Below, in pieces: positions 14,574 through 56,630 of a stretch of 64,000 nt of DNA (within the stretch, counting starts at the first letter, position 1; each line of letters opens with the position of its first letter). Source of the DNA: Macrostomum lignano (taxonomy: Eukaryota); contig NIVC01000003.1 in NCBI GenBank assembly GCA_002269645.1, forward strand, positions 124,001-188,000. The letters are read 5' to 3'. Below the pieces are notes generated by a model that saw nothing but the letters and a program-made list of their open reading frames with translations, did no database searches and had not been told where the DNA came from. The translations under genes were made by a program, and so were the position numbers.

Positions 14574-16456
14574 ATGCTTGAGCAGATTAAATTGGTCTGC
14601 AAGAAGCTGGCTGCTAGTGAGGAGCCAGTCCGAATCAAGGGCTTCTTAGGGGCAAAGAAGCTTCTTTCTGGTGCAGAGGCAGTATCATTTGATAACATGA
14701 TGCTCATAATGAAAGGCCTGCACTACATGCTGTGGATGCAGGACCAGCCAATTAAGCACGAGGACATTGTAGACATGATCTGCTCTCTTCTGGGTGCGAT
14801 ATCCAGTCCAAAGAACAAGTTGAACTTTATTAAAGCGCTATTCGAGACAGAAGCCAGAGAATGGTCTTCAATCGACTTCTGGCGCGCGGACAAGTTCATG
14901 ATGCTCGTGCGTCGCTTCCTCAAAGCCTCCCTGGCGTTTTTGCAGTCCAACGAATGGAGCAGCGAACTGGTCAGCCAGTTCGTTCAAATCCTCAGGGACA
15001 GCGTTGTTAATGCCGATTTCAACCAGCCTAGCAACGGCCTGAAGCTGCACTTGGCTGACATTGTTGCGAGGAGCTCAGCATCACCACCGCCGGTCCAGAT
15101 GCTGTGCTGGCAATTTTGCGACCCTTCATCGATATTGTGGCGTCCGGGATGCACAAGCACCACGTGGTGGACAAGGTTGAGCAGGCGGTGCTGCAGTATC
15201 TGGCCGATCAGGCACTCTACCAGGCGGAGTCCGCGCAGCAGGACTCGGTTGAGTCGGAAGTCTGCTTAGTTGACATCGACATGGAGGAGCTGTGCAAGTG
15301 CCTCTTTGCCCTGGGATCAGATCCCAGCGTGAAAAGCCCCAATCGAAAGCGACTGTTTCACTGGTACAAGACGTTTAGAAATATTCTGAGCGGCAATGTT
15401 GGACCGGAGGGCCTGGTGCCCGCCGGACCGACCCTGGGCAAGGAGGAAATCACAGCGGCGGTTGCCCGCCTCATTAAACAGGAGAACAAGCGGAGAAAAA
15501 AAAAGAAAGCAAAACGTCTAGTTGAGGACGGCCAAGCAGGGAGTTCGAATACGCAGCCCAGTGCACCAGCGTCAGGCGCTAAGCTGGCCAAGGTCAAGAC
15601 CCCGAAAGCTTTGGCCAAGCAAAAGCAGACTGTTGGAGGCGCCAAGTCTTCATTGGCTTTGGCAAAAAAGAAAGCCATTGCTGCTGGCGCTTCACCTCAG
15701 GGTGCCAGCATTGAAGCGCAGCCTGGAGTGGCCAAGTCCCCCCAAAGCCCAAGAACTGCCAAGCAGTCTGGGCAGTCGCCAAAATCCAATGAGAAATCGC
15801 CCGCCATCCAAGGAGCGCCTGAAGTTTCAGCCAAAGAGAAGTCGCCTGTCATAAAAAAATCGCCAAAAGGCCCAGCCCCGGCCAAAGCCAAAGAAAAATC
15901 GCCTGCTGTCCAGCAATCGCCCCAGGTCTCAAATAATAAAAAATCACCTCAGGGCTTGGCCAAAGAGAAATCGCCCGCCACCTCGAAGTCTCCCAAGGAC
16001 TCTGTCAAGCCGGAGTCCCCAGCCGGTGGCAAGCGCAAGCAGCCGTCTTTGTCGCCTTTGACGGCTCCCGGTGCGGGCAGCAGTACGCCGCCATCAGCTA
16101 AGCGCGCGCGCATGTCGCCCGCAGTGTCAGCGGACTGCAGCGTCACCCCGGCATCGCAGTCCGCAACGCCGAAGCAGCAGCTGCTTCTGTCCACGCCCCA
16201 GAGTGCTGACTGCGACAGCGAGGGAAAACAGAATCGTTCCGTAACATTTGGCAAGATATTTCGCAAGCGATTCAACAAGAAGGACCGGGTTGTTACGCCG
16301 ACGGCTTCGGGTGACGATAAAACGCCGGAGCGGTCGATTTTGAAGAAGTCGAGTGGCTTGGGCTCCTCGCTGAGGCTGCGCTCGCCAGGCTCCAAGAAGT
16401 CGCCAGGCTCCAAGAAGTCGCCGGCCTCCAAGAAGTCGCCGCAGAATCGCGTTTGA
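14574..16456 (+). CDS. RRP1B: RRP1B/Nop52-family ribosome biogenesis protein, intronless, with a 1-nt frameshift near 15064-15068
   Basis: Nop52 motifs KGLHYMLWMQDQP, EWSSIDFWRADKFMMLVRRFL and NGLKLHLADI lie in frame 1. EEL...LRPFIDIV and NRKRLF lie in frame 2 (ORF 15104..16456). The basic S/T-P-rich tail contains RSVTF (RVxF) and SILK PP1-docking motifs, as known for RRP1B. Confidence 0.85.
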
Positions 16457-16521: not shown

Positions 16522-19500
16522 ATGAGGTGAGTGAATTCTGCTGCTCACATGCTTGGTTTCAGCCTTTTATCTGCCATCAGAAATATCAACTGTCATCCCA
16601 TGCTACAGCATGTTATTTAAAAGTTCAGTTAGTTCTAATTAGAGGCAGGGAGCTGCCCATTCCGCCGATTCCCTTGAGCATGTCACACAAGCGCGCGGAT
16701 ACGTACGCAGTCATACGCACAGGCACACACTCACACAGGAGTGTACAGCGGCCCTAAACTTTATGTATCGGTAGGCATGTACACTTCACTGCGCCTTGCG
16801 GATTGGTCCTCAAGAACGTTAATTGAACGAGAAGACACAAGGCGGACTTCCAATTTAGCCTAAAGTAATGTGACGGCACCTGGGCCGCTGGCACATACTG
16901 AAGTGCAGATATGCCAAGCAATACTTTCACTTGTGCTCTTATTTCATGAATTCAAAGTATAATCTTTCAATAAAAGACGAACATTTTTTCAGATTGAAAT
17001 TCAACAGTTCGCTTGGCTACCTGGCGAGCTGGGAATGTAATATTTCGGCATTTATGATGAGGCCAACTGCGTTCCGCTCTTCGAGATTGACCAGCTTCCT
17101 TCTATCTCTTGTTCTTCGTAGCCTGAAATGCCTATGTTTTTTCGCAGACTATTGTAAATGCCTAATTTACACTTATTATTAAATTAAGGTTTCATTGCTT
17201 TATTTTATAATATTACTCATAGTAGTTTAGACAATGCGCGAGTTTATCAATCTGCTATCTAAACTCCCTGCGGGCATTCTCTGCTGATATTGTAGTTTAG
17301 CCATATTGTACGTGCGCCCTAAACCATCCGCCATGCTGCACTGACACTTATAAACTGGTTATGTTCTGCTTTTTAATTTATTATCTAATTCTATTGACTT
17401 GTTGTTCGATTTCTAGTATGCCAACAGAATCAGTGCGAGTGCACACTTGCTTATATTTTGGCCGTATGTTTGCAGCCTTAGCCGTTTGAGCATTTTATTA
17501 TTGTGCTTTGTTTCACACCTGTTCCCAGCTTCATTGTCATAATTAATCATTTTTATGGACTGGACTGGCGTGACTACGGAACTGATATGCGATCGCAGTG
17601 ACTGAGTAATAAGGAGTCTGGTCTTCATTTCCTTATTGTGAATTATTTCTTTATCGTAAGGTAAATTGAGTATTTGGGCGGGTGCTATTGTAGTGCAAGA
17701 CTAAGGGGTGCTCAGGCTAGAACTAAGGGGTGCTCAGGCTACTGTAGTGCAGAACTAAGGGGTGCTCAGGCTACTGTAGTGCAAGACTAAGGGGTGCTCA
17801 GGCTACTGTAGTGCAGAACTAAGGGGTGCTCAGGCTACTGTAGTGCAGAACTAAGGGGTGCTCAGGCTACTGTAGTGCAAGACTAAGGGGTGCTCAGGCT
17901 ACTGTAGTGCAAGACTAAGGGGTGCTCAGGCTACTGTAGCGCAAGACTAAGGGGTGCTCAGGCTACTGTAGTGCAGAACTAAGGGGTGCTCAGGCTACTG
18001 TAGTGCAAGACTAAGGGGTGCTCAGGCTACTGTAGCGCAAGACTAAGGGGTGCTCAGGCTACTGTAGTGCAAGACTAAGGGGTGCTCAGGCTACTGTAGT
18101 GCAAGACTAAGGGGTGCTCAGGCTACTGTAGCGCAAGACTAAGGGGTGCTCAGGCTACTGTAGTGCAAGACTAAGGGGTGCTCAGGCTACTGTAGTGCAG
18201 AACTAAGGGGTGCTCAGGCTACTGTAGTGCAAGACTAAGGGGTGCTCAGGCTACTGTAGCGCAAGACTAAGGGGTGCTCAGGCTACTGTAGTGCAAGACT
18301 AAGGGGTGTTCAGGCTACTGTAGTGCAAGACTAAGGGGTGCTCAGGCTACTGTAGCGCAAGACTAAGGGGTGCTCAGGCTACTGTAGTGCAAGACTAAGG
18401 GGTGCTCAGGCTACTGTAGTGCAAGACTAAGGGGTGCTCAGGCTACTGTAGTGCAAGACTAGGGGGTGCTCAGGCTACTGTAGTGTAAGACTAGGGGGTG
18501 CTCAGGCTACTGTAGTGCAAGACTAGGGGGTGCTCAGGCTACTGTAGTGCAAGACTAAGGGGTGCTCAGGCTACTGTAGTGCAAGACTAAGGGGTGCTCA
18601 GGCTACTGTAGTGCAGAACTAAGGGGTGCTCAGGCTACTGTAGTGCAGAACTAAGGGGTGCCCAGGCTACTGTAGTGCAGAACTAAGGAGTGCTCAGGCT
18701 ACTGTAGTGCAGAACTAAGGGGTGCTCAGGCTACTGTAGTGCAAGACTAAAGGGTGTCAGGGGTTCCTAATACTCAGTGCAATGTACTGCTGACTCAAAG
18801 AGGCATCACTAGTATGATACAGAACTCCTGCTTCTCCTGTTTCCAATAGCGGCAATCCAAATCCTCGCTGACTTCAGTCTCTGGACGCCCGTCTGGCATC
18901 CCTGGCCGAGTGCCAGCGGCGGCTCGCTGGCTTTCGGGACGCCCAGCCCACTGAGCTGCCATCGGAAGCGGAGCTGGCCGCCTCCTGGTCTGGCTTCATC
19001 TCCGCCTTTGCCGAGCTGTCAGCTCAGGCCGGTCAGCAGCGAACTCGCGCCCTGGATTCGGCCGCCGCGACCATCAAGCGGGTGGCCGCCAAGGGCCGCC
19101 GCCAGTTCCAGTTTCTGCGCGCCGGATTCGTTCAGCTGGCGTCCGCCTGGCCGAGCCGCGCCAACTCGTGGCGCGAGCGCTCCAGCGTGCTGCTGGAACT
19201 GGCAGTCAGCTGCAGCCTCTACTGGATCTGCTGCTCCGGGCAACGCCGCAAACGGCGCCGGCAGAAACAGCCGAGCGAAGTTGACGCGACTGCAGCGACT
19301 GTTGCTAAGAGAGTTGGCCGCCTCGGCGACCTCTGGGTGGACGGCCTTCTGCTCGGCGGCACTGACTGCCCTGCTGGATTCGAGGAGGACAGGTTCGATT
19401 CTCGGCCAATTGACAGGGTTTTAATAAAATAAGGGTGCTGGAAGTGCCTTAAGATAGGGGTAGTGATGTAGAGAGGTCACTGCACTGCCATTCGTACGCC

Positions 19501-25795: not shown

Positions 25796-27657
25796 TACTC
25801 CTCTCCGCTCCCCCCGCCTCTCCGCTCCCTCCGACTCTCCGCTCCCTCTGACTCTCCGCTCCCTCCGACTCTCCCCTCTCTCTGAATCTCCCCTCCCTCC
25901 GCCTCTCCGCTCCCCCCGCCTCTCCGCTCCCCCCGCCTCTCCGCTCCCTCCGACTCTCCCCTCCCTCTGAATCTCCCCTCCCTCCGCCTCTCCGCTCCCT
26001 CTGAATCTCCCCTCCCTCTGAATCTCCATTCCCTCTGACTCTCCCCTCCCTCTGAATCTCCACTCCCTCTGAATTTTCGCTCCCTCTGACTCTCCCCTCC
26101 CTCTAAATCTCCGCTCCCTCCGACTCTCCCCTCCCTCTGACTCTCCGCTCCCTCCGACTCTCCCCTCCCTCTGAATCTCCACTCCCTCCGACTCTCCCCT
26201 CCCTCTGAATCTCCACTCCCTCTGAATCTCCACTCCCATTGAATCTCCACTCCCTCTGAATCTCCGCTCCCTCTGAATCTCTACTCCCATTGAATCTCCG
26301 CTCCCTCTGAAATTCCGCTCCCTCCGACTCTCCCCTCCCTCTGACTCTCCGCTCCCTCCGACTCTCCCCTCCCTCTGAATCTCCACTCCCTCCGACTCTC
26401 CGCTCCCTCTGAATCTCCGCTCCCTCCGACTCTCCCCTCCCTCTGATTCTCCGCTCCCTCCGACTCTCCCCTCCCTCTGAATCTCCGCTCCCTCTGAATC
26501 TCCGCTCCCTCTGACTCTCCCCTCCCTCTGAATCTCCGCTCCCTCCGACTCTCCCCTCCCTCTGAATCTCCACTCCCATTGAATCTCCGCTCCCTCTGAA
26601 TCTCCACTCCCATTGAATCTCCCCTCCCTCTGAATCTCCGCTCCCTCTGAATCTCCGCTCCCTCCGACTCTCCCCTCCCTCTGACTCTCCGCTCCCTCCG
26701 ACTCTCCCCTTCCTCTGAATCTCCGCTCCCTCCGACTCTCCCCTCCCTCTGAATCTCCACTCCCTCTGAATCTCCACTCCCTCCGACTCTCCCCTCCCTC
26801 TGAATCTCCACTCCCTCTGAATCTCCGCTCCCTCCGACTCTCCACTCCCTCTGAATCTCCACTCCCTCTGAATCTCCGCTCCCTCCGACTCTCCCCTCCC
26901 TCTGACTCTCCACTCTCTCTGAATCTCCACTCCCTCTGAATCTCCGCTCCCTCCGACTCTCCCCTCCCTGTGAATCTCCACTCCCTCTGAATCTCCACTC
27001 CCTCTGAATCTCCGCTCCCTCCGACTCTCCCTCCCTCTGAATCTCCGCTCCCTCTGAATCTCCGCTCCCTCCGACTCTCCCCTCCCTCTGAATCTCCATT
27101 CCCTCTGAATCTCCGCTCCCTCCGCCTCTCCCCTCCCTCTGAATCTCCCCTCCCTCTGAATCTCCCCTCCCTCTGAATCTCCCCTCCCTCCGACTCTCCC
27201 CTCCCTCCGACTCTCCCCTCCCTCTGAATCTCCCCTCCCTCTGAATCTCCGCTCCCTCCGCCTCTCCCCTCCCTCTGAATCTCCCCTCCCTCTGAATCTC
27301 CCCTCCCTCCGACTCCCCTCTCTCTGAATCTCCTCTCCCTCTGAATCTCCCCTCCCTCTGAATCTCCCCTTCCTCTGAATCTCCTCTCCCTCTGAATCTC
27401 CCCTCCCTCCGCCTCTCCCCTCCCTCCGACTCTCCCCTCCCTCCGACTCTCCCCTCCCTCTGAATCTCCCCTCCCTCTGAATCTCCCCTCCCTCTGAATC
27501 TCCGCTCCCTCCTCCCCCTCCGACTCTCCCCTCCCTCCGACTCTCCCCTCCCTCTGAATCTCCCCTCCCTCTGAATCTCCCCTCCCTCTGAATCTCCCCT
27601 CCCTCTGAATCTCCCCTCCCTCTCAATCTCCCCTCCCTCCGACTCTCCGCTCCCTCA
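25796..27657. repeat. ~17-bp pyrimidine-rich satellite (CTCTGAATCTCCCCTCC and variants)
   Basis: About 1.9-kb tandem array; source of the ORFs at 25773-27626. Confidence 0.95.
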
Positions 27658-28242: not shown

Positions 28243-29838
28243 ATTTGAGTAGGTAGGCAGGAAAAGCGGCACCCAGCCCAGCACCATAGTTTGAGTAGGT
28301 AGGCAGGAATAGCGGCACCCAGCCCAGCACCATAGTTTGAGTAGGTTGGCAGGAATAGCGGCACCCAGCCCAGCACCATAGTTTGAGTAGGTAGGCAGGA
28401 ATAGCGGCACCCAGCCCAGCACCATAGTTTGAGTAGGTAGGCAGGAATAGCGGCGCCCAGCACCATAGTTTGAGTAGGTTGGCAGGAATAGCGGCACCCA
28501 GCCCAGCACCATAGTTTGAGTAGGTTGGCAGGAATAGCGGCACCCAGCTCAGCACCATAGTTTGAGTAGGTAGGCAGGAATAGCGGCACCCAGCCCAGCA
28601 CCATAGTTTGAGTAGGTTGGCAGGAATAGCGGCAACCAGCCCAGCACCATAGTTTGAGTAGGTAGGCAGGAATAGCGGCACCCAGCTCAGCACCATAGTT
28701 TGAGTAGGTAGGCAGTAATAGCGGCACCCAGCTCAGCACCATAGTTTGAGTAGGTAGGCAGGAATAGCGGCACCCAGCCCAGCACCATAGTTTGAGTAGG
28801 TTGGCAGGAATAGCGGCAACCAGCCCAGCACCATAGTTTGAGTAGGTAGGCAGGAATAGCGGCACCCAGCTCAGCACCATAGTTTGAGTAGGTAGGCAGG
28901 AATAGCGGCACCCAGCTCAACACCATAGTTTGAGTAGGTTGGCAGGAGTAGCGGCAACCAGCTCAGCACCATAGTTTGAGTAGGTAGGCAGGAATAGCGG
29001 CACCCAGCTCAGCACCATAGTTTGAGTAGGTAGGCAGGAATAGCGGCACCCAGCTCAGCACCATAGTTTGAGTAGGTTGGCAGGAATAGCGGCACCCAGC
29101 CCAGCACCATAGTTTGAGTAGGTAGGCAGGAATAGCGGCACCCAGCTCAGCACCATAGTTTGAGTAGGTAGGCAGGAATAGCGGCACCCAGCTCAGCACC
29201 ATAGTTTGAGTAGGTAGGCAGGAATAGCGGCACCCAGCCCAGCACCATAGTTTGAGTAGGTAGGCAGGAATAGCGGCACCCAGCCCAGCACCATAGTTTG
29301 AGTAGGTTGGCAGGAATAACGGCAACCAGCCCAGCACCATAGTTTGAGTAGGTTGGCAGGAGTAGCGGCAACCAGCCCAGCACCATAGTTTGAGTAGGTT
29401 GGCAGGAATAGCGGCACCCAGCCCAGCACCATAGTTTGAGTAGGTAGGCAGGAATAGCGGCACCCAGCCCAGCACCATAGTTTGAGTAGGTAGGCAGGAA
29501 TAGCGGCACCCAGCTCAGCACCATAGTTTGAGTAGGTAGGCAGGAATAGCGGCACCCAGCTCAGCACCATAGTTTGAGTAGGTAGGCAGGAATAGCGGCA
29601 CCCAGCTCAGCACCATAGTTTGAGTGGGTAGGCAGGAATAGCGGCACCCAGCTCAGCACCATAGTTTGAGTAGGTAGGCAGGAATAGCGGCAACCAGCCC
29701 AGCACCATAGTTTGAGTAGGTAGGCAGGAATAGCGGCACCCAGCTCAGCACCATAGTTTGAGTAGGTTGGCAGGAATAGCGGCAACCAGCTCAGCACCAT
29801 AGTTTGAGTAGGTAGGCAGGAATAGCGGCACCCAGCCC
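28243..29838. repeat. 46-bp minisatellite (AGCACCATAGTTTGAGTAGGTAGGCAGGAATAGCGGCACCCAGCCC)
   Basis: About 34 head-to-tail copies with no spacers. Confidence 0.97.
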
Positions 29839-30032
29839 ATTTCTCATCAGATTTGCTATGCTACATGTATTATCGATTTTTCCAACAAGACAAGACAGTG
29901 CGTGAATAATATTTCGATACCATTTTGATATCAATGTCTTCAGAGCCTGGTAGATCTTGTTTATTAGTCAAAACTTCGTGAACCGTCGTGTTATAAAGTT
30001 TTCCTCGATTCATTCCGAGCTGTCGGTCACAT

Positions 30033-34118: not shown

Positions 34119-36799
34119 AAGGAGGCAGGGAGGGAGGAAGACGGACAGGCAGATGGATTGCTCAAGTTCAGCTCAAGAACCATCAAGCGCCCCCACACAG
34201 CGCATTCCTCTGCTTCAAAGAAGTCAATTCCAGAGCCAGGCAACTCTTCGGCAGCAAGCCGGTCCGTGGCCTCGTCCGCCTCCTGACCCAGTTCTCAGTT
34301 CCCCGATCAAGTCTATGAAGATTGCATTGCCGCAAGCGGGCTGAGACTGCGCAATGAAATTGCCGTGGCGCCTCGTCGCAACCGCCGCCCCCAGCCCCCC
34401 AATTTACTCGCCCCTCCGGCCACGTCAGCGGCTCGCTTGGCTGGCCAATTGTTTTCTAAAATAGGAGATTCCAGTAAATAGGAAAATGCCCGCCTGCCCC
34501 ATTAGAGCCAATCACCGGCCTCGCATCCGAGCGCCCCGCGGCTCCCCCGGCGCCGGGCCCGGCGGCTACTTATTGGGGCGAGGCGGTCGCCCAGAAGCCT
34601 GCGCGCACCTGCCGACTCCGCCACCGACGCCAAGAGAGGAGGATCAGCTTCCACTACCGACTGTTGAAAGTGAGGAAAATTCTTCAGGATAATTTCTGAG
34701 CCTATTCAGAGAGTCTGTGAGTTTCGCCATCGCAACTTTCGCTTATTTGCCACACTCTAGGTGGGGGCTGGAAACTGTTCTGATCCTCTCAAGATTGCTG
34801 CTCAGTGCGGCGCATTCTCCCACCTTCTCACTTTGGACCCAGCAGAGGGTGGCTGCTGACAAAGTCCTTGTTGTTTCTGCTGCAACTTCTCGCTATCTGA
34901 GTCAGCAGTGGCGAGTCCTCAGCTCTCCTTTGTCTCACAGAGCTGAGCCGGCTGGGATTTGGACTCGGGCAGTGCAGCTCAACTGCAGTGGGAGGGAGTA
35001 CTTGAGTGCCGGCTGCTTCATGGGCATTGTTGAATGGCAGAGCCACAAAACACTTGCAACAATTGCTGATAGCTCGCATTGGGCCTCGAAACCAAACTGC
35101 CTGGATGCGGGGAAGGAAGGAGCCGCAGAGCTGCAGTCCCTGCCTGCCGATCTGCTGCTACTTCGCCACATTCTGACAGGCAGAACCAGCGCGTCAGACG
35201 CAAGCCCTCCTCAAGAGGAGCAAGTGGAGCTGCTCTCCACGTCAGAACCATGATTCCCCCCTTGTGCCCAGCTTTCGGATGTCTCGGCTGGCCCGTTTTT
35301 GCAGCAGCTGTCCAAAATTTTCCTAATTTAGAAGATGAGAGAAGAGACTGAATGGAGCAGCGGCTTTGCCATCGATCAGCCCTCGGTTCGATTGCTTGCA
35401 TTGTGCTCGCGCTGCTCGGCGAACGCTGAATGCCGCTTCCCACGCTGCCACGACCAGCGAGTCCCGGGCAGGTGGGCGGGGAGTGGGGATAATTGCTTTC
35501 TTCCTCTGCCCGGCAACGCGATTGGCAATGTAAAACTGGGGAACCGGACCGCGGAATTCGCTTCCACGAGCCCGGCTGCCCGCCGGATCTCCGAGGCCGA
35601 CTGCGGCAGGGCAATAATTTCTTGAGTCGGTCAACATGCCGGAGAAGGAGGTAATTACCACCTGTTTGCTCTGGCCACCCAGAGCCACTCGCACAGCACA
35701 CAAAGTTTTTTCTTGTTCGCCATTTCTTGCCTGCTTCGATGAATATTCAATTGCGAGCGGAACATTTTCTGCTCCCGGCTGCTCCTTGATGCTCAAGTTT
35801 AGTGACAAAGTGGCCTCGCTAATCTTTCAGTTCCTCAAGCAGCTCTTTCCCGAGTGGAAGGTGTGAGGGAAGTTTTTCCCCGACTTCTCCCCATCCGACT
35901 GGTTCGTAAATCACAGTCAAGTGGCGCCCGCCCCGATGAAGAGGGAGCCGGGCGGGGGCGGGCATGGGAGGAAAGCGGGACAAATGGCTGCTCAGATGAT
36001 CAATGACTCGAAGGTGGCCGGGGCAGCCAGGCGGCAAAGCGAATGGGATCCGGGGGCTCCAGTTTCATGCTGCAGTTCGGTGTTGCTGGCTGCCTCTTTC
36101 CGCCCCCTCCCCCTGTCTGTCCGCCCCTCCCCCCTCCCCTATCTCGGCGATCGGTGAAGCACGAAAATCAAAGTGGCCAGCCAGTTCAGGAGGAAGCCCG
36201 TGTGAGAAGACTGATGACGAAGAGAGGCTGGAGTTCCCCAGATCCCGAAGCGGGAAACTTGGCGCTGACAGTTTTTGCAGAAAACTCGGAGCTGACCGAT
36301 TTCAAAGTTTAAAAAATCGATGTCACCAATCGGGTGACAAATGGGGGGGGGGGCAGAGGCCCATCTCTCCCGCTCGGTTTTATGGCCCAAGCTGAAGAAG
36401 GTCAGAGGAAACCTCCTGAGGTCTCTTGTGTGGCCGTGAGCTATTCCGCTGCTCTCAGCTACTTGGCAGTTTCTCCTGGAGAGTTGCACTCAGGGCATCG
36501 GTGCAGCCATGGTTCGGGTGGTTAGGCAGAATCGCATTTTTATGTCAACACCGTGGTTAAATAGCTGCATGAGAAGCTCATTGAGAAGCTGCTGCTCACC
36601 TTCACTGCCTCATCATCAATGATTCGGATCAGTGCGCTCTCTCTGAGCAACGATACCCCCACGGCTGGGCTTGCTTGTCACGCTACGGCAAATTTGACGA
36701 AGAAGTGCATGTGGCATCCCGGAGAGGAGCCGCGAGCTTTTCTGCCTTCAACTTTGAAGTGCTTGAGGACCTGCTCGCCCATCGGGTCCTCGCCCTCCA

Positions 36800-37170: not shown

Positions 37171-38103
37171 GAACGCAGCATGGAAGTTGAGCAATATCAT
37201 CGGTGATTGAGTAACGCATCAAGGAACCAAGAGCATAAAGTTTGCACTATTTTGGAAGCTCGTTGGAGCCCGGGCAGGGGGAAATAATTGCCCTAGCAAA
37301 ATCTGCAATTCTTTTGCAGATCTTGCAAGTTTACGAGCCAATTGGTACATTTATAACTTTCCTTAACTCAATCGATTGCATGCATTTTTGTTACTAATCG
37401 ACAAATATTTTTCCATTTCTTTTTATCCGCTTTTTCATGTGCCATTTGACACTGCTTTGGACAATTATTTCCTGATGGGAGGCTTCAGGACTGCCCAATC
37501 CGTGTTTCTGCCCAATCGAAGCGACCCCTCCCTCAGAAAAGCGATCCACTGGAAGCGTGACCGTCCATCCCACTTAGCAGGTCGGAGGGAAAACAAGAAA
37601 GCAACACAAGATCACCTTGATTGCAAGCAAATTAGCAGATGAAGGCCAGAGGAGGCTGACCTGAAATTCAAGCCTCAGCGGCGGGTAAATTGGCAGCTCC
37701 GCGGCTTCCGTGTTTGCGGATTCCACCTGAACTGTTTCTCCAGACCCACCGGTCATCTGTGTGTTTCTGTCCTCTCTGTGCAATAGAAAGGGAATTCCCC
37801 CCCCCCCCTCGGTTCTCCTTCTTTCCCGCCAGCCCCCCGCGGCCTGCAAGCAACTTTTTGAGTAGCCGGGGATCAAAGCGATGGGGAGACGAAGTGGAGA
37901 CGGCGCTGGCGGTTGCCAACCAGACTGCTGGGGTGCCGGGCAGCCCCCATCAATCAAAGCCGAAGGGGCGGGGCGGGAGGCTGGGACAGCTGGATTGATG
38001 TTGCAGATTAGTAACAACCTGACCCAGGCGCGCCGCTGCATTCCGCCTCCCCTTCAGGTGAAGCTCAAACAGAGGAATTGCGCCAAGCAAAGGGAAACGC
38101 AAG

Positions 38104-39358
38104 ATGAAGTCCGCAATCTGCTTGCCGAGTTTGCTGCTCCTGCTGCTGGCCGCCATCCTGGGGGCCTCCGACAGCGCGCGTGAGTCCGTCTGGTATTGTG
38201 TCTGTCACTGTGTCTGTTTGGTATTGTGTGCGTCACTGTGTCCGTCTGGTATTGTGTCCGTCACTGTGTCCGCCTGCTATTGTGTGCGTCACTGTGTCCG
38301 TCAGGTATTGTGTCCGTCACTGTGTCCGTCTGGTATTGTGTCCGTCACTGTGTCCGTCTGGTATTGTGTCCGTCATTGTGTCAATCACTGTGTCCGTCAG
38401 GTATTGTGTCTGTCACTGTGTCTGTTACCGTGTCTGTCACTGTGTCCTGTGTCTGTCACTGTGTCTGTCACTGTGTCTGTCACTGTGTCCAGCACTGTGT
38501 CCGTCTAGTATTGTGTCCGTCACTGTGTCCGTCTGGTATTGTGTCCGTCATTGTGTCAATCACTGTGTCCGTTACTGTGTCCATCTGGTATTGTGTCCGT
38601 CACTGTGTCAATCACTGTGTCCGTTACTGTGTCCGTCCCCGTGTCTGTCACTGTGCCTGTTTGTTACTGTGTCTGACACTGTGTCTGTCTGGTATTGTCA
38701 GATCGAATCGTGCAAGTCTGATAAAAATCAGTTAAGCCATTTTTTAATATTTCACACATACCTAGATAGATAGAGACAAACCTTATTTAGTATAGTAGAA
38801 TCTATTTTCAAAGAAAAAAGAATTGATTTACCAATGGAAGCCTAAAGCTACCTTTTTCGCCGTGTTTCAGCCGTCTCCAGCGACATCGCTCACGTCGACT
38901 CCCTTGCGGTGGGCGAGCGCGGAGCCCCCGATGCGTCCGATGCTCATCTGCTCGAGGCTGAGGAGAAACGGGCACGCGGTTTTCTAGGAAAGCGAGCACG
39001 TGGTTTTCTAGGAAAGCGAGCACGCGGTTTTCTAGGAAAGCGAGCTCGGGGATTTCTCGGAAAGCGAGCCCGTGGATTTCTCGGAAAGCGAGCCCGTGGA
39101 TTTCTTGGAAAGCGTGCCCGTGGTTTTCTTGGAAAGCGAGCACGAGGTTTTCTTGGAAAGCGAGCACGAGGCTTCCTAGGCAAGAGGGCGCGTGGTTTTC
39201 TTGGAAAACGTGCCAGAGGTTTTCTAGGAAAGCGAGCCCGCGGATTTCTAGGAAAGCGCAACGGCGATTACGACGACGAATATCTGATGGACGAAGACAG
39301 CCATTCCGATCATGACGAAGCTGCTTTCGAGGACTGGCGTGACGAAGGTGACGAATGA
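38104..39358 (+). CDS. Neuropeptide precursor (187 aa) encoding 12 x ARGFL-amide
   Basis: Exon 1 (38104-38179) encodes the signal peptide MKSAICLPSLLLLLLAAILGASDSA. Exon 2 (38871-39358; phase 1, ...TTTCAG acceptor) has an acidic spacer, 12 x (KR)ARGFLG(KR) and an acidic tail. Dibasic cleavage plus Gly amidation signal. Confidence 0.93.
38185..38700. repeat. Degenerate minisatellite (GTATTGTGTCCGTCACTGTGTCCGTCTG) in the neuropeptide intron
   Basis: Tandem copies start right after the donor site. Confidence 0.9.
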
Positions 39359-39841
39359 ATTGCCCTGAGCATGGACCATCAAGAACTGATCAGCGAGTTC
39401 CACGGGTGATGAAAACTAGAGAACCAGCCAGACTGAACTGATGAGCCCTGATGCCCGCTCAGAGAAGACAGTTTTGCCTCCCAACCCGATTTTAATATCC
39501 CTCTTCTTCTGAGCTTAAAATCCATCCCAAATGCTGTTCGCCAGTCACTGCGGATACCAAGCAAAATAAACGATGAGCAACTTTCTGTTGACGAGCCCCG
39601 ATGTTCCCAGCTGGCTCGGGCTGCAAAAATCAAAGTAAAGATTTTGTCAGATTTTTCCGTTTGCCACATATTTGCTGTATAGCCTAGTTCAAGTAGCGCA
39701 GTGGGAAAACGTCTCCTAAAAATAATTTGCCATTGCCAATATGTCAATGTTAATGTTTTAATTCCGTTTTAAGCACTTCTTTAGGACTAAATGCCAGTAA
39801 TTTCAGCGAAACGAAGGCAGACGTCTTGCAGCGCTACATTC

Positions 39842-40586
<745 letters not shown>

Positions 40587-45240: not shown

Positions 45241-47028
<1,788 letters not shown>

Positions 47029-47653
47029 CGCTCTGAAAGCGAATCCCAGACTTGTAGGCGCACTAATTAATCCAGAAGAAATTCTCATCAGATTTGCGCC
47101 GAGCCAGTCAGCCGAGCATCCACCCGCTTTTGTCATTCCGGGCCAGAGACGCCTGCAACTTATCGATCTGGTTATGACTGATCCTCCTCGCATCCCTGAG
47201 AAGATGGAGACGGCTCGGGAAGAAATCCCCCAGTTTTTAACTCACTTGAAATTCCGTCGCATCTGGTAGAGGACCCGATTCGGACATATTTCTGCCCAGC
47301 TCCGGTTCGTCTCCCGCGCTGGAATTTGTCCCTTGGAGGCGCCCCGGCCCTAATAAAATTGATTGATCCGCTGCCCGATTGATTTTGCTGTCTCTGGGCC
47401 GCTCATTTGCATGTTGAGTGTCCGGTGGGGTCGGCGCCCATGGGACGGCTGTTTCTTTTTGAAACCGCCCCCCCCCCTCAAAGAGTTCTGAGAGGCCGCT
47501 GCTTCGCTGCGAACTTTCATGGACTCGCGCCATTATGATAATTAGCATAATGGCCTCTGGGATGCCGTGCTCTGCTGGCTCGCAACCGAATTATTACTTC
47601 CTGCATCAGCAGCTTTAAAAGGGCATTTTGGGATGCAGCTGTGGGGGGAGGAG

Positions 47654-48641
<988 letters not shown>

Positions 48642-49340
48642 GAGCTCGAATTCCGGTCATATAAAGCCAGCTGTGCTTGCAAGCTACAGTGCGTGATTCA
48701 GGTGTGACTGAGTAACTCAGGATCGGCTGAGCTCTTGACGCCCGTCTCGGGAGGGGGCGGTTGCTGGGAATTCAGCAGGCATTTCCTGAATTGCGCGTGG
48801 CGGGTAGGGCGGCACAGCAATGCAGGCAGCCAGAGCCGCAGGATGGGTATGGCTAGTCTAACGCGGAGATGCAGCGCAGATGCTGGACGGGTGACGGGAA
48901 GCCGTGGGAGGCGGAGCAGCCCCATGCGAGCATTGTTTTAATTCTACAGCTGGGGAATCAATACAGTGCAGTGCGGCGGCGCCACCCTCCCGCTCCGCCT
49001 CAGCGGCTGCAGCGAGCTTCGAAAAACTGCTGCGGCTTCCCCGGGCCCGGCGCTTCTTTGCTCCCCATTTGAGGGCGGCTCAGCAGCCGCTGAGACAAAG
49101 CCTAAAGCGTTTTCCGTGTTGCGGAACCGCCGCGGGATGATGCAGCTGCTGCTGATGCTGCCGCCGGAGGGCCGCTTGAAGAAAATCGAGGAGGCTGTCT
49201 TGTTTGCGCCGCGTATTTGTGAGACCCAAAGTTTTTCTTGACCGCCTGGTTCCTGAATCAGTAGATGCGATTGAGGATAATTTTGTTTGCAACTGCCAAA
49301 ATGTTTGCGATAGTTGCTACTCTCAGTACTGTAGTTGTTT

Positions 49341-49825: not shown

Positions 49826-51644
49826 GGTTTAAAAACAAATATATTGGCAGTGAAGTTATTGTAACATAATTTCAATATATATATATGCTACTTTTGGGGT
49901 GCACTGAGCAGTGTTGAGTAAAGATGTGTACGTATAATTAGTTAAAAACGTGAGTTGAAGCACGCTGATTGGTTAAAGATTGGCAGCTTAAAGCCTTGCA
50001 CAAAAAATATTAAAGATGTTAGGTGCTATAGAAAAACAGATTTAGAGCGTAGAAGTGTATGAATAAGCATCTTGAAAAGTTCAACAAATAAGTTATTTAC
50101 GCCCGTAGAATTGAGAACAAATATTAAATTAAAACAGAGCACTGAGAACTTTTCAAAAAGAAGTGCAAGTAAATAGATGTTATTACATAAACAGTAAATA
50201 AATTGAGTCGCCAGGCAGGCCACTAGTTGCAGTTGGCGGCGTCTGGTCACAGATCGCCGCCTGCACAGCCCCTGGTCACAGGCGACTGGGCACTGCAGAT
50301 CAGTTGAGGCTAGATTATCAGTAGTAGTAGCACTAGTAGTTGCAGTAGTAGCTCGTAGTAGTAGTAATGGAAGTAGTAGTAGTACAAGTATTAGTAGAGT
50401 AGTAGTAGAGCAGTCGTAGGCGTAGTCGTAGTAGAGGCGTACTGGTAAGCAGTTATTTGAAGTAGCCAGGCAGGCCACTAGTCGCAGTTGGCGGCGTCTG
50501 GTCACAGATCGCCGCCTGCACAGCCCCTGGTCACAGGCGACTGGGCACTGCAGATCAGTTGAGGCTAGATTATCAGTAGTAGTAGCACTAGTAGTTGCAG
50601 TAGTAGCTCGTAGTAGTAGTAATGGAAGTAGTAGTAGTACAAGTATTAGTAGAGTAGTAGTAGAGCAGTCGTAGGCGTAGTCGTAGTAGAGGCGTACTGG
50701 TAAGCAGTTATTTGAAGTAGCCAGGCAGGCCACTAGTCGCAGTTGGCGGCGTCTGGTCACAGATCGCCGCCTGCACAGCCCCTGGTCACAGGCGACTGGG
50801 CACTGCAGATCAGTTGAGGCTAGATTATCAGTAGTAGTAGCACTAGTAGTTGCAGTAGTAGCTCGTAGTAGTAGTAATGGAAGTAGTAGTAGTACAAGTA
50901 TTAGTAGAGTAGTAGTAGAGCAGTCGTAGGCGTAGTCGTAGTAGAGACGTACTGGTAAGCAGTTATTTGAAGTAGCCAGGCAGGCCACTAGTCGCAGTTG
51001 GCGGCGTCTGGTCACAGATCGCCGCCTGCACAGCCCCTGGTCACAGGCGACTGGGCACTGCAGATCAGTTGAGGCTAGATTATCAGTAGTAGTAGCACTA
51101 GTAGTTGCAGTAGTAGCTCGTAGTAGTAGTAATGGAAGTAGTAGTAGTACAAGTATTAGTAGAGTAGTAGTAGAGCAGTCGTAGGCGTAGTCGTAGTAGA
51201 GACGTACTGGTAAGCAGTTATTTGAAGTAGCCAGGCAGGCCACTAGTCGCAGTTGGCGGCGTCTGGTCACAGATCGCCGCCTGCACAGCCCCTGGTCACA
51301 GGCGACTGGGCACTGCGGATCAGTTGAAGCTAGATTTTCAGTAGTAGTAGCACTAGTAGTTGCAGTAGTAGTAGTAGTGGTAGTAGAGTAGTAGTAGTAC
51401 AGTCGTAGTCGTAGCCGTAGTCGTAGTAGTGTCGTGCGTCTTAAATATTCAGCTGCAGAAATAGTACTCTTGCTTATCCCAAGTAGATTTTTGGCGGAGA
51501 ATAGCTCGTATACGAAGATATTTTGTTGACAAACATGGCGAGCCTCAATAATAGTCCGGTCCTGGGTACAGATATTCATAAGGCAGTTTGAAACTGCAAA
51601 CCACGCACTCGGAAGATATTGAAGGTTACCAGTTGTCGAATGTT

Positions 51645-51700: not shown

Positions 51701-53265
51701 GGTTTAAAAACAAATATATTGGCAGTGAAGTTATTGTAACATAATTTCAATATATATATATGCTACTTTTGGGGGTGCACTGAGCAGTGTTGAGTAAAGA
51801 TGTGTACGTATAATTAGTTAAAAACGTGAGTTGAAGCACGCTGATTGGTTAAAGATTGGCAGCTTAAAGCCTTGCACAAAAAATATTAAAGATGTTAGGT
51901 GCTATAGAAAAACAGATTTAGAGCGTAGAAGTGTATGAATAAGCATCTTGAAAAGTTCAACAAATAAGTTATTTACGCCCGTAGAATTGAGAACAAATAT
52001 TAAATTAAAACAGAGCACTGAGAACTTTTCAAAAAGAAGTGCAAGTAAATAGATGTTATTACATAAACAGTAAATAAATTGAGTCGCCAGGCAGGCCACT
52101 AGTTGCAGTTGGCGGCGTCTGGTCACAGATCGCCGCCTGCACAGCCCCTGGTCACAGGCGACTGGGCACTGCAGATCAGTTGAGGCTAGATTATCAGTAG
52201 TAGTAGCACTAGTAGTTGCAGTAGTAGCTCGTAGTAGTAGTAATGGAAGTAGTAGTAGTACAAGTATTAGTAGAGTAGTAGTAGAGCAGTCGTAGGCGTA
52301 GTCGTAGTAGAGGCGTACTGGTAAGCAGTTATTTGAAGTAGCCAGGCAGGCCACTAGTCGCAGTTGGCGGCGTCTGGTCACAGATCGCCGCCTGCACAGC
52401 CCCTGGTCACAGGCGACTGGGCACTGCAGATCAGTTGAGGCTAGATTATCAGTAGTAGTAGCACTAGTAGTTGCAGTAGTAGCTCGTAGTAGTAGTAATG
52501 GAAGTAGTAGTAGTACAAGTATTAGTAGAGTAGTAGTAGAGCAGTCGTAGGCGTAGTCGTAGTAGAGACGTACTGGTAAGCAGTTATTTGAAGTAGCCAG
52601 GCAGGCCACTAGTCGCAGTTGGCGGCGTCTGGTCACAGATCGCCGCCTGCACAGCCCCTGGTCACAGGCGACTGGGCACTGCAGATCAGTTGAGGCTAGA
52701 TTATCAGTAGTAGTAGCACTAGTAGTTGCAGTAGTAGCTCGTAGTAGTAGTAATGGAAGTAGTAGTAGTACAAGTATTAGTAGAGTAGTAGTAGAGCAGT
52801 CGTAGGCGTAGTCGTAGTAGAGACGTACTGGTAAGCAGTTATTTGAAGTAGCCAGGCAGGCCACTAGTCGCAGTTGGCGGCGTCTGGTCACAGATCGCCG
52901 CCTGCACAGCCCCTGGTCACAGGCGACTGGGCACTGCGGATCAGTTGAAGCTAGATTTTCAGTAGTAGTAGCACTAGTAGTTGCAGTAGTAGTAGTAGTG
53001 GTAGTAGAGTAGTAGTAGTACAGTCGTAGTCGTAGCCGTAGTCGTAGTAGTGTCGTGCGTCTTAAATATTCAGCTGCAGAAATAGTACTCTTGCTTATCC
53101 CAAGTAGATTTTTGGCGGAGAATAGCTCGTATACGAAGATATTTTGTTGACAAACATGGCGAGCCTCAATAATAGTCCGGTCCTGGGTACAGATATTCAT
53201 AAGGCAGTTTGAAACTGCAAACCACGCACTCGGAAGATATTGAAGGTTACCAGTTGTCGAATGTT

Positions 53266-53321: not shown

Positions 53322-55141
53322 GGTTTAAAAACAAATATATTGGCAGTGAAGTTATTGTAACATAATTTCAATATATATATATGCTACTTTTGGGGGTGCA
53401 CTGAGCAGTGTTGAGTAAAGATGTGTACGTATAATTAGTTAAAAACGTGAGTTGAAGCACGCTGATTGGTTAAAGATTGGCAGCTTAAAGCCTTGCACAA
53501 AAAATATTAAAGATGTTAGGTGCTATAGAAAAACAGATTTAGAGCGTAGAAGTGTATGAATAAGCATCTTGAAAAGTTCAACAAATAAGTTATTTACGCC
53601 CGTAGAATTGAGAACAAATATTAAATTAAAACAGAGCACTGAGAACTTTTCAAAAAGAAGTGCAAGTAAATAGATGTTATTACATAAACAGTAAATAAAT
53701 TGAGTCGCCAGGCAGGCCACTAGTTGCAGTTGGCGGCGTCTGGTCACAGATCGCCGCCTGCACAGCCCCTGGTCACAGGCGACTGGGCACTGCAGATCAG
53801 TTGAGGCTAGATTATCAGTAGTAGTAGCACTAGTAGTTGCAGTAGTAGCTCGTAGTAGTAGTAATGGAAGTAGTAGTAGTACAAGTATTAGTAGAGTAGT
53901 AGTAGAGCAGTCGTAGGCGTAGTCGTAGTAGAGGCGTACTGGTAAGCAGTTATTTGAAGTAGCCAGGCAGGCCACTAGTCGCAGTTGGCGGCGTCTGGTC
54001 ACAGATCGCCGCCTGCACAGCCCCTGGTCACAGGCGACTGGGCACTGCAGATCAGTTGAGGCTAGATTATCAGTAGTAGTAGCACTAGTAGTTGCAGTAG
54101 TAGCTCGTAGTAGTAGTAATGGAAGTAGTAGTAGTACAAGTATTAGTAGAGTAGTAGTAGAGCAGTCGTAGGCGTAGTCGTAGTAGAGGCGTACTGGTAA
54201 GCAGTTATTTGAAGTAGCCAGGCAGGCCACTAGTCGCAGTTGGCGGCGTCTGGTCACAGATCGCCGCCTGCACAGCCCCTGGTCACAGGCGACTGGGCAC
54301 TGCAGATCAGTTGAGGCTAGATTATCAGTAGTAGTAGCACTAGTAGTTGCAGTAGTAGCTCGTAGTAGTAGTAATGGAAGTAGTAGTAGTACAAGTATTA
54401 GTAGAGTAGTAGTAGAGCAGTCGTAGGCGTAGTCGTAGTAGAGACGTACTGGTAAGCAGTTATTTGAAGTAGCCAGGCAGGCCACTAGTCGCAGTTGGCG
54501 GCGTCTGGTCACAGATCGCCGCCTGCACAGCCCCTGGTCACAGGCGACTGGGCACTGCAGATCAGTTGAGGCTAGATTATCAGTAGTAGTAGCACTAGTA
54601 GTTGCAGTAGTAGCTCGTAGTAGTAGTAATGGAAGTAGTAGTAGTACAAGTATTAGTAGAGTAGTAGTAGAGCAGTCGTAGGCGTAGTCGTAGTAGAGAC
54701 GTACTGGTAAGCAGTTATTTGAAGTAGCCAGGCAGGCCACTAGTCGCAGTTGGCGGCGTCTGGTCACAGATCGCCGCCTGCACAGCCCCTGGTCACAGGC
54801 GACTGGGCACTGCGGATCAGTTGAAGCTAGATTTTCAGTAGTAGTAGCACTAGTAGTTGCAGTAGTAGTAGTAGTGGTAGTAGAGTAGTAGTAGTACAGT
54901 CGTAGTCGTAGCCGTAGTCGTAGTAGTGTCGTGCGTCTTAAATATTCAGCTGCAGAAATAGTACTCTTGCTTATCCCAAGTAGATTTTTGGCGGAGAATA
55001 GCTCGTATACGAAGATATTTTGTTGACAAACATGGCGAGCCTCAATAATAGTCCGGTCCTGGGTACAGATATTCATAAGGCAGTTTGAAACTGCAAACCA
55101 CGCACTCGGAAGATATTGAAGGTTACCAGTTGTCGAATGTT

Positions 55142-55459: not shown

Positions 55460-56630
<1,171 letters not shown>

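What the first reader, a model, noticed from the sequence alone, without database searches (positions are those of the whole stretch)
38104..39358. Neuropeptide precursor releasing 12 identical ARGFL-amide peptides
Seen: a signal-peptide exon spliced in phase to an exon with 12 x KR-ARGFLG-KR between acidic spacers. The repeats are identical in protein but differ at synonymous sites (GCA CGC GGT TTT CTA GGA AAG CGA; GCT CGG GGA TTT CTC; GCA CGA GGC TTC CTA GGC AAG AGG; GCC AGA GGT), which indicates purifying selection, unlike the surrounding satellites. Established: KR cleavage and C-terminal Gly amidation. I do not recognise ARGFLa as a described peptide. Similarity to spiralian FLamide/FVamide-type pentapeptides is inference. 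A repeat masker or ORF finder would split or hide this gene.
Basis: partly seen in the sequence, partly recalled or inferred. Interest (0 to 1): 0.75.

Follow-up and report, generated by a model that had tools for sequence, protein, structure and literature searches.

The report
Flatworm FLamide-type neuropeptide precursor gene
This is a real two-exon gene of the flatworm Macrostomum lignano that encodes a secreted precursor carrying 12 identical copies of a short peptide (predicted ARGFL-amide); it is a new flatworm member of a neuropeptide family already known from annelids, molluscs and nemerteans, so it is a sound find but not a surprising one.

Summary
ATG 38104 opens a 76-nt signal-peptide exon. 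A GTGAGT/tttcAG phase-1 intron (38180-38870, mostly satellite) joins it in frame to exon 2 (38871-39358). The product is 187 aa with 12 back-to-back ARGFLGKR units (38972-39259). The acidic stretches flank the array and do not separate the copies.

Eleven of the 12 units differ in DNA. At least 18 changes are needed and all are synonymous (P about 1e-9). Only this reading frame keeps the units identical.

The window is Macrostomum lignano. A 99%-identical locus in GenBank assembly NIVC01 carries a model derived from RNA-seq transcripts, BOX15_Mlig001753g3, with the same exon junction. That model lists only 7 units, although its own DNA encodes 12.

The nearest named relatives are spiralian FLamide (Urechis) and PRQFVamide-type precursors with x-R-x-F-[L/V/I]-Gly-KR repeats. 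A second M. lignano gene (RHSFLGKR units) has the same architecture and intron phase, so it is a paralogue.

Cleavage, amidation, neuronal expression and the receptor are all inferred. No open paper names ARGFLamide, but McVeigh 2009 and Koziol 2016 could not be read.

Verdict: new member of a known kind, moderate interest.

The parts
34508..34669 (+). Possible upstream non-coding (5'UTR) exon, donor GTGAGG at 34670; low confidence
   Evidence: The UniProt model P0012 (A0A1I8IRI5) joins this stretch to position 38058 (tblastn; sequence). CCAAT motifs lie just upstream. The frame used by that model has no Met and no signal peptide.
38058..38103 (+). 5'UTR directly upstream of the start codon, beginning after a pyrimidine-rich cttcAG acceptor (38056-38057) that may be a cis- or trans-splice acceptor
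   Evidence: The start context is caagATGa, with A at -3.
38104..38179 (+). Coding exon 1: signal peptide (n-region MK, hydrophobic core AICLPSLLLLLLAAIL, small polar c-region GASDSA); ends in codon phase 1
   Evidence: Kyte-Doolittle 11-residue means reach 3.1. The exon is identical in the second locus L001.
38180..38870 (+). Phase-1 intron, GTGAGT...tttcAG, mostly a 12/28-nt TGTGTCCGTCAC-type satellite (38184-38689)
   Evidence: It is 691 nt here and 1045 nt in L001 because the satellite length differs.
38871..38971 (+). Start of coding exon 2: acidic N-terminal propeptide (PVSSDIAHVDSLAVGERGAPDASDAHLLEAEE) ending in the first KR site (38966-38971)
38972..39259 (+). Array of 12 seamless 24-nt units, each encoding ARGFLG-KR (predicted product ARGFL-NH2 x12)
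   Evidence: 11 distinct DNA units, 1 protein unit, at least 18 synonymous and 0 non-synonymous changes.
39260..39358 (+). Acidic C-terminal tail NGDYDDEYLMDEDSHSDHDEAAFEDWRDEGDE (16 D/E of 32) and TGA stop (39356-39358)
39359..39570 (+). 3'UTR up to the only AATAAA in the next 640 nt (39565-39570)
   Evidence: The actual poly(A) site was not determined.

Best explanation
This is a functional Macrostomum lignano prohormone gene. The signal peptide (exon 1) directs the 187-aa precursor into the secretory pathway. Prohormone convertases then cut at the 13 Lys-Arg sites, carboxypeptidase removes the basic residues, and peptidylglycine alpha-amidating monooxygenase converts the exposed C-terminal Gly into an amide. 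Each precursor molecule would yield 12 copies of ARGFL-NH2 (calculated [M+H]+ 562.346), and the acidic N- and C-terminal pieces are discarded or serve to neutralise the +38 array. The peptide belongs by form, and probably by descent, to the spiralian F[L/V/I]amide group (FLamide, PRQFVamide, fulicin-related). It most likely acts as a neuronal signalling peptide through a GPCR or a peptide-gated channel, on cilia or muscle. Shown here: the gene structure, selection on every residue of the unit, transcript-based annotation of the same junction, the family resemblance, and a paralogue with the same architecture. Inferred: the processing steps, amidation, neuronal expression, the receptor and the physiological role.
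For: In-frame GT-AG splice giving a signal peptide plus 12 x ARGFLGKR. At least 18 changes among units, all synonymous, P about 1e-9; only this frame keeps the units identical. The organism and an existing model: BOX15_Mlig001753g3 (P0001) has the same N-terminus, junction and C-terminus. The GenBank NIVC01 annotation was built only from RNA-seq-derived transcripts (PMC5730564). The second locus L001 is about 99% identical in the flanks, with both non-repeat coding parts conserved. Nearest named relatives are FLamide of Urechis (P0004, E 2.7e-19), PRQFVamide of Plakobranchus and Deroceras, and PRQFV-amide-like of Lineus. 106 retrieved precursors share xxxF[LVIM]-G-dibasic units, with R or K at position -4 in 53% and A at -5 in 23%. 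A paralogue, BOX15_Mlig024654g1 (P0170, locus L002), has a signal peptide, a phase-1 intron after 79 nt, an acidic spacer ending E-KR, 10 seamless 8-aa units RHSF[LM]GKR/RHGFIGKR and an acidic tail. F[V/L/I]amides are described as widespread in lophotrochozoans, and a Platynereis FLamide receptor has been deorphanised (PMC8557429). FLamide causes downward swimming of Platynereis larvae (PMC5130983).
Against: There are no direct data on the peptide, its amidation or its site of expression. SignalP and NeuroPred were not available; the signal peptide was judged from hydrophobicity and composition only. The similarity to other phyla rests on a 5-residue motif plus processing sites, which can arise convergently. 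Gly at position -3 after Arg is unique among the 106 relatives. The Cys-rich N-terminal domain found in 32 of 54 FL-type precursors and the RNNFLamide copy (12 of 57) are absent. Orthologues of the Platynereis FLamide receptor are reported only from annelids and brachiopods (PMC8557429). The KRAR context puts a basic residue at P4 of the internal Arg, so partial cleavage to GFL-NH2 cannot be excluded.
Confidence: 0.8

Rival explanations
1. It is a real amidated-peptide precursor, but a flatworm-specific invention. On this reading the resemblance to trochozoan FLamide/PRQFVamide precursors is convergence on a short hydrophobic amidated C-terminus, not common descent.
For: Only A, R, F, L and the GKR processing signal are shared. 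There is no Cys-rich N-domain and no RNNFLamide copy. RGFL is unique among the 106 relatives. No non-Macrostomum flatworm homologue was recovered. FLamide-receptor orthologues are known only in annelids and brachiopods. The E-values are inflated by the repeat structure; translated satellites also scored down to 1e-30.
Against: The A-[K/R]-x-F-L-Gly-KR unit matches 31 of 57 FL-type precursors. Seamless 8-aa arrays also occur in other family members, such as RSPFLGKR x9 in P0036. The best named hit of the M. lignano paralogue outside the species is a nemertean PRQFV-amide-like protein. The family is considered pan-lophotrochozoan.
Confidence: 0.25
2. The precursor is processed differently. Cleavage also occurs after the internal Arg (K-R-A-R|G, basic residue at P4), so the main product is the tripeptide GFL-NH2 rather than ARGFL-NH2.
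For: The sequence context KRAR is seen directly in every unit. The rule that monobasic sites with a basic residue at P4, P6 or P8 can be cleaved is established knowledge, not tested here.
Against: Ala and the internal Arg are as strictly conserved as F and L across 12 units, despite synonymous change in both codons. That is expected if they are part of the active peptide. Related precursors have the same A-[K/R] start. From my own recollection, not checked here, AKYFLamide is treated as the mature peptide in Platynereis.
Confidence: 0.1
3. It is a secreted repetitive product of a non-neuronal cell (gland, epidermis or reproductive tissue), for example a cationic antimicrobial or adhesive-related peptide set, and not a neuropeptide.
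For: The array is very basic (+38). No expression data were available. Macrostomum has many gland-specific secreted proteins (my own knowledge).
Against: Every unit carries a Gly-Lys-Arg amidation and cleavage signature. A 5-residue product is far shorter than typical antimicrobial peptides. The nearest relatives are all neuropeptide precursors.
Confidence: 0.08
4. It is a minisatellite that happens to be open in one frame, or a decaying pseudogene. No functional product is made.
For: The window is packed with satellites. Tandem Repeats Finder scores the array as a 24-nt tandem repeat. The internal unit composition differs between two near-identical loci.
Against: 18 of 18 changes are synonymous, P about 1e-9. 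There is a signal-peptide exon in phase. A transcript-derived model exists. A paralogue has the same exon-intron plan.
Confidence: 0.02

Closest known systems
Spiralian FLamide precursors (AKYFLamide of Platynereis and Urechis; ARPFLamide and ARYFLamide variants)
   Same: Both have a signal peptide and many copies of a pentapeptide A-[K/R]-x-F-L followed by Gly and Lys-Arg, with acidic non-peptide parts. These are the best named hits in sequence searches.
   Different: Gly occupies position -3, and RGFL is found in no other retrieved precursor. All 12 copies are identical and seamless, rather than grouped between acidic spacers. The Cys-rich N-terminal domain (present in 32 of 54 FL-type precursors) and the [L/P]RNNFLamide copy are both absent.
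Molluscan and nemertean PRQFVamide / FVamide precursors (Aplysia-type PRQFVamide; Plakobranchus, Deroceras, Lineus entries)
   Same: They carry x-R-x-F-[V/I/L]-Gly-KR pentapeptide repeats. They give the highest phmmer scores after the self hit.
   Different: The C-terminal residue there is mostly Val or Ile, the precursors are much longer (350-630 aa) with heterogeneous copies, and position -3 is usually D, E, Q or M.
Second M. lignano gene BOX15_Mlig024654g1 (UniProt A0A1I8IBX8), RHSFL/RHSFM/RHGFI units
   Same: Same species and the same plan: a signal-peptide exon ending in phase 1, an intron of about 1 kb, an acidic spacer of about 33 aa ending E-KR, seamless 8-aa units and an acidic tail. 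The acceptor context is similar, ccgtttcAG.
   Different: The unit sequence differs (R-H-S-F-L against A-R-G-F-L). It has 10 units that are not all identical, and it lies on a different scaffold.
Arthropod EFLamide (GSEFLamide) and annelid EFLGamide, the TRH-type peptides
   Same: Both have a C-terminal F-L(-G) amide and a repetitive precursor. VPGSEFLGKR precursors appear among the weaker hits.
   Different: The defining Glu before Phe is replaced by Gly here, and those peptides have no basic residue at position -4. The link between FVamide and EFLGamide precursors is known from annelids only (PMC3890597).

Membership tests
Spiralian F[L/V/I]amide group (FLamide / PRQFVamide / fulicin-related proneuropeptides) | N-terminal signal peptide | tested here: met
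   Residues 1-22 are MK, then a 16-residue hydrophobic core, then GAS(DSA). Kyte-Doolittle means reach 3.1. No dedicated predictor was available.
Spiralian F[L/V/I]amide group (FLamide / PRQFVamide / fulicin-related proneuropeptides) | Multiple copies of a short peptide ending F-[L/V/I]-Gly, bounded by dibasic sites | tested here: met
   12 x KR-ARGFLG-KR.
Spiralian F[L/V/I]amide group (FLamide / PRQFVamide / fulicin-related proneuropeptides) | Basic residue at position -4 (x-[R/K]-x-F-[LVI]) | tested here: met
   Arg is at -4 here. R or K occupies -4 in 53% of distinct units from 106 relatives, and A occupies -5 in 23%.
Spiralian F[L/V/I]amide group (FLamide / PRQFVamide / fulicin-related proneuropeptides) | Named family members are the best database matches | tested here: met
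   FLamide [Urechis], E 2.7e-19. PRQFVamide [Plakobranchus, Deroceras] and PRQFV-amide-like [Lineus]. The scores are inflated by the repeats, and some satellite translations also score.
FLamide in the narrow sense (annelid/mollusc AKYFLamide-type precursor) | Cys-rich N-terminal domain (C-x2-C ... CC ... C) before the first peptide | tested here: not met
   The only Cys in the precursor lies in the signal peptide. The domain is present in 32 of 54 full-length FL-type relatives and 3 of 49 FV-type relatives.
FLamide in the narrow sense (annelid/mollusc AKYFLamide-type precursor) | A conserved [L/P]RNNFLamide copy | tested here: not met
   Absent here; present in 12 of 57 FL-type relatives.
FLamide in the narrow sense (annelid/mollusc AKYFLamide-type precursor) | Ligand of the Platynereis-type FLamide receptor (rhodopsin-gamma GPCR) | not testable with these tools
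   No M. lignano proteome or receptor assay was at hand. Orthologues are reported only in annelids and brachiopods (PMC8557429).
Any neuropeptide | Mature amidated peptide detected; expression in neurons | not testable with these tools
   Needs peptidomics and in situ hybridisation.
EFLamide / EFLGamide (TRH-type) | Glu immediately before Phe-Leu | tested here: not met
   The position is Gly in all 12 units.
FMRFamide-like peptides (FLPs) | C-terminal Arg-Phe-amide | tested here: not met
   The C-terminus is Phe-Leu-(Gly). There is no Pfam FARP hit.

The most novel reading that the evidence does not exclude
The ARGFLamide gene and its RHSFLamide paralogue are true orthologues of the trochozoan FLamide/PRQFVamide genes. 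That would show the family predates the flatworm-trochozoan split. Flatworms are not reported to have the annelid-type FLamide receptor, so these peptides would act through the 'second receptor type' that Thiel et al. 2021 suspected. That would make M. lignano, which is transgenic and RNAi-tractable, the place to find it. A smaller point: both near-identical loci keep exactly 12 units despite different internal unit composition, which could reflect selection on peptide dosage.
Probability: 0.3. Interest if true: 0.5.

Novelty: new member of a known kind. Interest (0 to 1): 0.35.

Why it matters
It gives an uncharacterised GenBank 'hypothetical protein' of a flatworm model organism a concrete, testable function. 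It shows that the deposited models of this gene and of its paralogue list fewer repeat units than their own DNA encodes (7 against 12, and 9 against 10). It adds macrostomorph flatworms to the taxa with FLamide-type peptides. M. lignano glides on cilia and is amenable to RNAi and transgenesis, so the peptide is a practical entry point for asking whether the ciliary or locomotor role of FLamide in annelid larvae is conserved, and which receptor serves this family outside annelids. The finding does not change current views of neuropeptide evolution.

Tried and rejected
Transcript support therefore rests on the GenBank model and the description of how that annotation was built.
2. dN/dS between the window and the second locus L001 was not informative. 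The loci are about 99% identical outside the array, with 0 differences in exon 1 and the pre-array part, and 1 (D/N) in the tail.
3. Pfam gave only sub-threshold noise for the precursor, its paralogue and two named relatives.
4. Taxon names for the unnamed relatives with seamless arrays (RSPFL, RSAFL and RAFI types) could not be obtained. Two cluster look-ups returned almost no names.
5. P0059 could not be located on a contig. Its GenBank twin P0170 could.
6. Literature: full-text searches for ARGFL, RGFLG, RGFLamide, GFLamide and Mlig001753 found no neuropeptide paper. McVeigh et al. 2009, Koziol et al. 2016, Conzelmann et al. 2011 and Bauknecht & Jekely 2015 are not held. A 2026 review of marine flatworm neuropeptides does not mention FLamide or Macrostomum.
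7. I considered and rejected the alternative UniProt model P0012. It uses the other frame of exon 1 and the acceptor AG at 38879-38880. It has no start codon and no signal peptide, and with the ATG frame that acceptor runs into a stop (reading).
8. I considered the large ORFs at 50-57 kb as possible neighbouring genes. They are translations of a 255-nt tandem repeat.
9. Structure prediction was not run, because a short-repeat prohormone is not expected to fold.

Full report
**Observation**

The region reads as the first-stage reader said.
- An ATG at 38104, in the context caagATGa, opens a 76-nt exon encoding MKSAICLPSLLLLLLAAILGASDSA plus one base.
- A GTGAGT donor follows at 38180, and the acceptor is gtgtttcAG at 38869-38870.
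- Joining 38179 to 38871 keeps the frame (phase 1) and gives a 564-nt CDS of 187 aa ending at TGA 39356-39358.
- Residues 58-155 are KR followed by twelve ARGFLGKR units, at window 38972-39259.
- The units are seamless. The acidic stretches lie only on either side of the array: the N-propeptide has net charge -8, the C-tail -15 and the array +38. 'Between acidic spacers' is therefore true of the array as a whole, not of the individual copies.
- The intron (691 nt) is mostly a 12/28-nt satellite.
- An AATAAA lies at 39565.

**More than chance**

- Eleven of the twelve 24-nt units are distinct in DNA, yet all encode the same eight residues.
- Ten columns vary: all eight third positions and the two Arg first positions (CGN/AGR).
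- At least 18 changes are needed and all are synonymous, where 31-32% would be expected. This gives P between about 5e-10 and 1.5e-9.
- In the other five reading frames the same DNA gives 4-11 different units or stop codons.

**Organism and transcript support**

- The best database hit is 'hypothetical protein BOX15_Mlig001753g3 [Macrostomum lignano]' (P0001, E 1e-110). Its N-terminus, its exon junction (..DSA-P-VSS..) and its C-terminus match the window protein apart from one D/N change.
- Its locus (L001, NIVC01000236.1) is colinear with window 29.2-44.6 kb at 93-99% identity. It is therefore an allele or a very recent duplicate of the window's locus.
- According to Wudarski et al. 2017, the GenBank annotation of NIVC01 consists only of RNA-seq-derived transcripts (StringTie/TACO plus a de novo assembly, with ORFs called by TransDecoder; PMC5730564). 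The junction thus has transcript support, though at second hand.
- P0001 lists 7 units. The contiguous exon 2 of its own locus encodes 12: eleven ARGFLG and one SRGFLG. The likely cause is that short-read transcripts collapsed the array.
- The two loci both have 12 units but different internal make-up. L001 has six 'GCA CGY GGT TTT CTA' units against three in the window, and it lacks three of the middle variants. The array is therefore turning over by unequal exchange or conversion while the peptide stays fixed.
- Outside the array the loci are too similar for a dN/dS test.

**An alternative model**

- A UniProt model (P0012) reads exon 1 in another frame, uses an AG ten bases downstream (38879-38880) and adds an upstream exon at 34508-34669.
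- It has no start codon and no signal peptide, so I do not follow it for the coding part.
- It does suggest that the mRNA carries an upstream non-coding exon, or a splice (possibly spliced-leader) acceptor at 38057.
- The 'g3' suffix of the GenBank name also marks the gene as one of several in a transcriptional unit.

**Relatives**

- A word-seeded search and an exhaustive phmmer search of 1.84 billion representatives (247 hits at E up to 1e-3) return repetitive precursors with units of the form xxxF[L/V/I/M]-Gly-dibasic.
- 106 of the fetched proteins have at least three such units.
- The named ones are FLamide of Urechis (AKYFLG units), PRQFVamide of Plakobranchus and Deroceras, PRQFV-amide-like of Lineus, and an uncharacterised Tubulanus protein with (A/S)REFLG units.
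- Across distinct units, R or K occupies position -4 in 53% and A occupies position -5 in 23%. A-[K/R]-x-F-L-G units occur in 31 of 57 FL-type precursors. A-R-G-F-L therefore fits the family pattern.
- No other protein has R-G-F-L. Gly at position -3 otherwise follows Pro or, once, Asn — never a basic residue.
- The E-values overstate the case because the query is a repeat. Translated vertebrate-type satellites (GSRVRGFAG...) also reached about 1e-30.
- The Cys-rich N-terminal domain seen in 32 of 54 FL-type precursors and the RNNFLamide copy are both missing here.
- Seamless 8-aa arrays are not unique to this gene, for example RSPFLGKR x9 in P0036.

**A paralogue**

- One hit, P0059 (UniProt A0A1I8IBX8), and its GenBank twin P0170 (BOX15_Mlig024654g1) are also from M. 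lignano.
- At its locus (L002), exon 1 is 79 nt (signal peptide, phase 1, GTAAGT donor), the intron is 1033 nt, and the acceptor is ccgtttcAG.
- Exon 2 encodes an acidic spacer ending E-KR, ten seamless units (RHSFLGKR x7, RHSFMGKR x2, RHGFIGKR x1) and an acidic tail.
- The deposited model has one unit fewer than the DNA here too.
- The shared exon plan, intron phase and 8-residue period indicate that the two genes are paralogues. M. lignano thus has a small FLamide-type family.

**Mechanism**

The steps follow from the established prohormone pathway and were not tested here:
1. Signal peptidase removes the signal peptide.
2. Prohormone convertase cuts at Lys-Arg.
3. Carboxypeptidase E-type trimming removes the basic residues.
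4. Peptidylglycine alpha-amidating monooxygenase converts the C-terminal Gly to an amide.

The product would be twelve ARGFL-NH2 per precursor. Selection acts on Ala, Arg and Gly as strictly as on Phe, Leu and the GKR signal. That favours the pentapeptide over a GFL-NH2 product of cleavage at KRAR, although that product cannot be excluded.

For function there is only analogy:
- FLamide drives downward swimming of Platynereis larvae (PMC5130983, citing Conzelmann et al. 2011).
- FLamide is expressed in a ciliomotor neuron of Platynereis (PMC5531833).
- A Platynereis FLamide receptor is known, but orthologues were found only in annelids and brachiopods. This led Thiel et al. to ask whether a second receptor type exists (PMC8557429).

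**Comparison and membership**

- The gene works like a member of the spiralian F[L/V/I]amide group, which includes FLamide, PRQFVamide and the fulicin-related precursors (PMC3890597; PMC6425005). It meets the general criteria of that group.
- It does not meet two features typical of the narrower annelid/mollusc FLamide precursor: the Cys-rich domain and the RNNFLamide copy.
- I therefore file it under the broad group and leave strict orthology open, giving about 0.25 to convergence.
- It is not an EFLamide/TRH-type peptide (no Glu before Phe) and not an FMRFamide-like peptide (no RFamide C-terminus).

**Novelty**

- No open full-text paper contains ARGFL, RGFLG, RGFLamide or Mlig001753 in a neuropeptide context.
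[quoted passage not shown] They cite McVeigh et al. 2009, and their figure includes Macrostomum peptides (PMC3503879).
- McVeigh et al. 2009 and Koziol et al. 2016 are not held, so a prior listing of this peptide under an 'npp' name cannot be excluded.
- The locus itself is in GenBank as a hypothetical protein.
- The finding is best rated as a new member of a known kind. It brings a useful annotation correction and a testable function, and is of moderate interest.

Noticed in passing
L001:10001-11609 (NIVC01000236.1) and L002:3001-4504 (NIVC01001089.1): The deposited GenBank proteins for both M. lignano FLamide-type genes have fewer repeat units than their own genomic DNA encodes: P0001 has 7 against 12, and P0170 has 9 against 10. 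The tool also flags both as 'translates_to_query: no'. The likely cause is collapse of the 24-nt array in short-read transcript assemblies.
   Followed up: yes
L002:3001-4504: A second M. lignano precursor (BOX15_Mlig024654g1 / UniProt A0A1I8IBX8) has 10 seamless RHSF[LM]GKR/RHGFIGKR units and the same phase-1 intron directly after the signal peptide. It is a paralogue of the window gene.
   Followed up: yes
window 38972-39259 compared with L001:11223-11510: Two about 99%-identical loci both carry 12 units but with different internal composition: six against three 'GCA CGY GGT TTT CTA' units, with three middle variants missing in L001. L001 also has one Ala-to-Ser unit. This points to array turnover with an unchanged copy number.
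   Followed up: partly
window 34508-34669 and 38056-38057; 38879-38880: A UniProt model (A0A1I8IRI5, named 'RRP7 domain-containing protein') joins an upstream exon (donor GTGAGG at 34670) to an acceptor at 38057, and uses an alternative acceptor AG at 38879-38880. This may mark a 5'UTR exon or a trans-splice site. The coding frame of that model looks wrong.
   Followed up: partly
window 14565-15269 (+), continuing to about 16456: An ORF with a strong Nop52/RRP1 nucleolar-protein domain (PF05997, E 5e-44). It is a neighbouring housekeeping gene about 22 kb upstream.
   Followed up: no
window 50206-51401, 52082-53022, 53703-54898: Three blocks of a 255-nt tandem repeat (98% matches) are arranged as a higher-order duplication of about 3.5 kb. 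The ATG-start ORFs of 432-517 aa on the minus strand are translations of this repeat. Their only family hits are sub-threshold 'New_glue' matches (22-23 bits against a cut-off of 31).
   Followed up: partly
window-wide, e.g. 17722-18761, 25819-27656, 28244-29839, 39842-40586, 45403-47029, 47654-48642, 55460-56630: The density of micro- and minisatellites is very high, with periods of 4, 12, 17, 32 and 46 nt and up to about 290 copies. The 17-nt array at 25.8-27.7 kb produces the extreme GC skew (-0.66) seen in the composition profile.
   Followed up: no
P0003 (Tubulanus polymorphus LOC141901003): A nemertean precursor with (A/S)REFLGKR repeats ends in a Cys-rich domain annotated as prokineticin (PF06607). 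FLamide-type repeats fused to a colipase-fold domain is an unusual combination.
   Followed up: no
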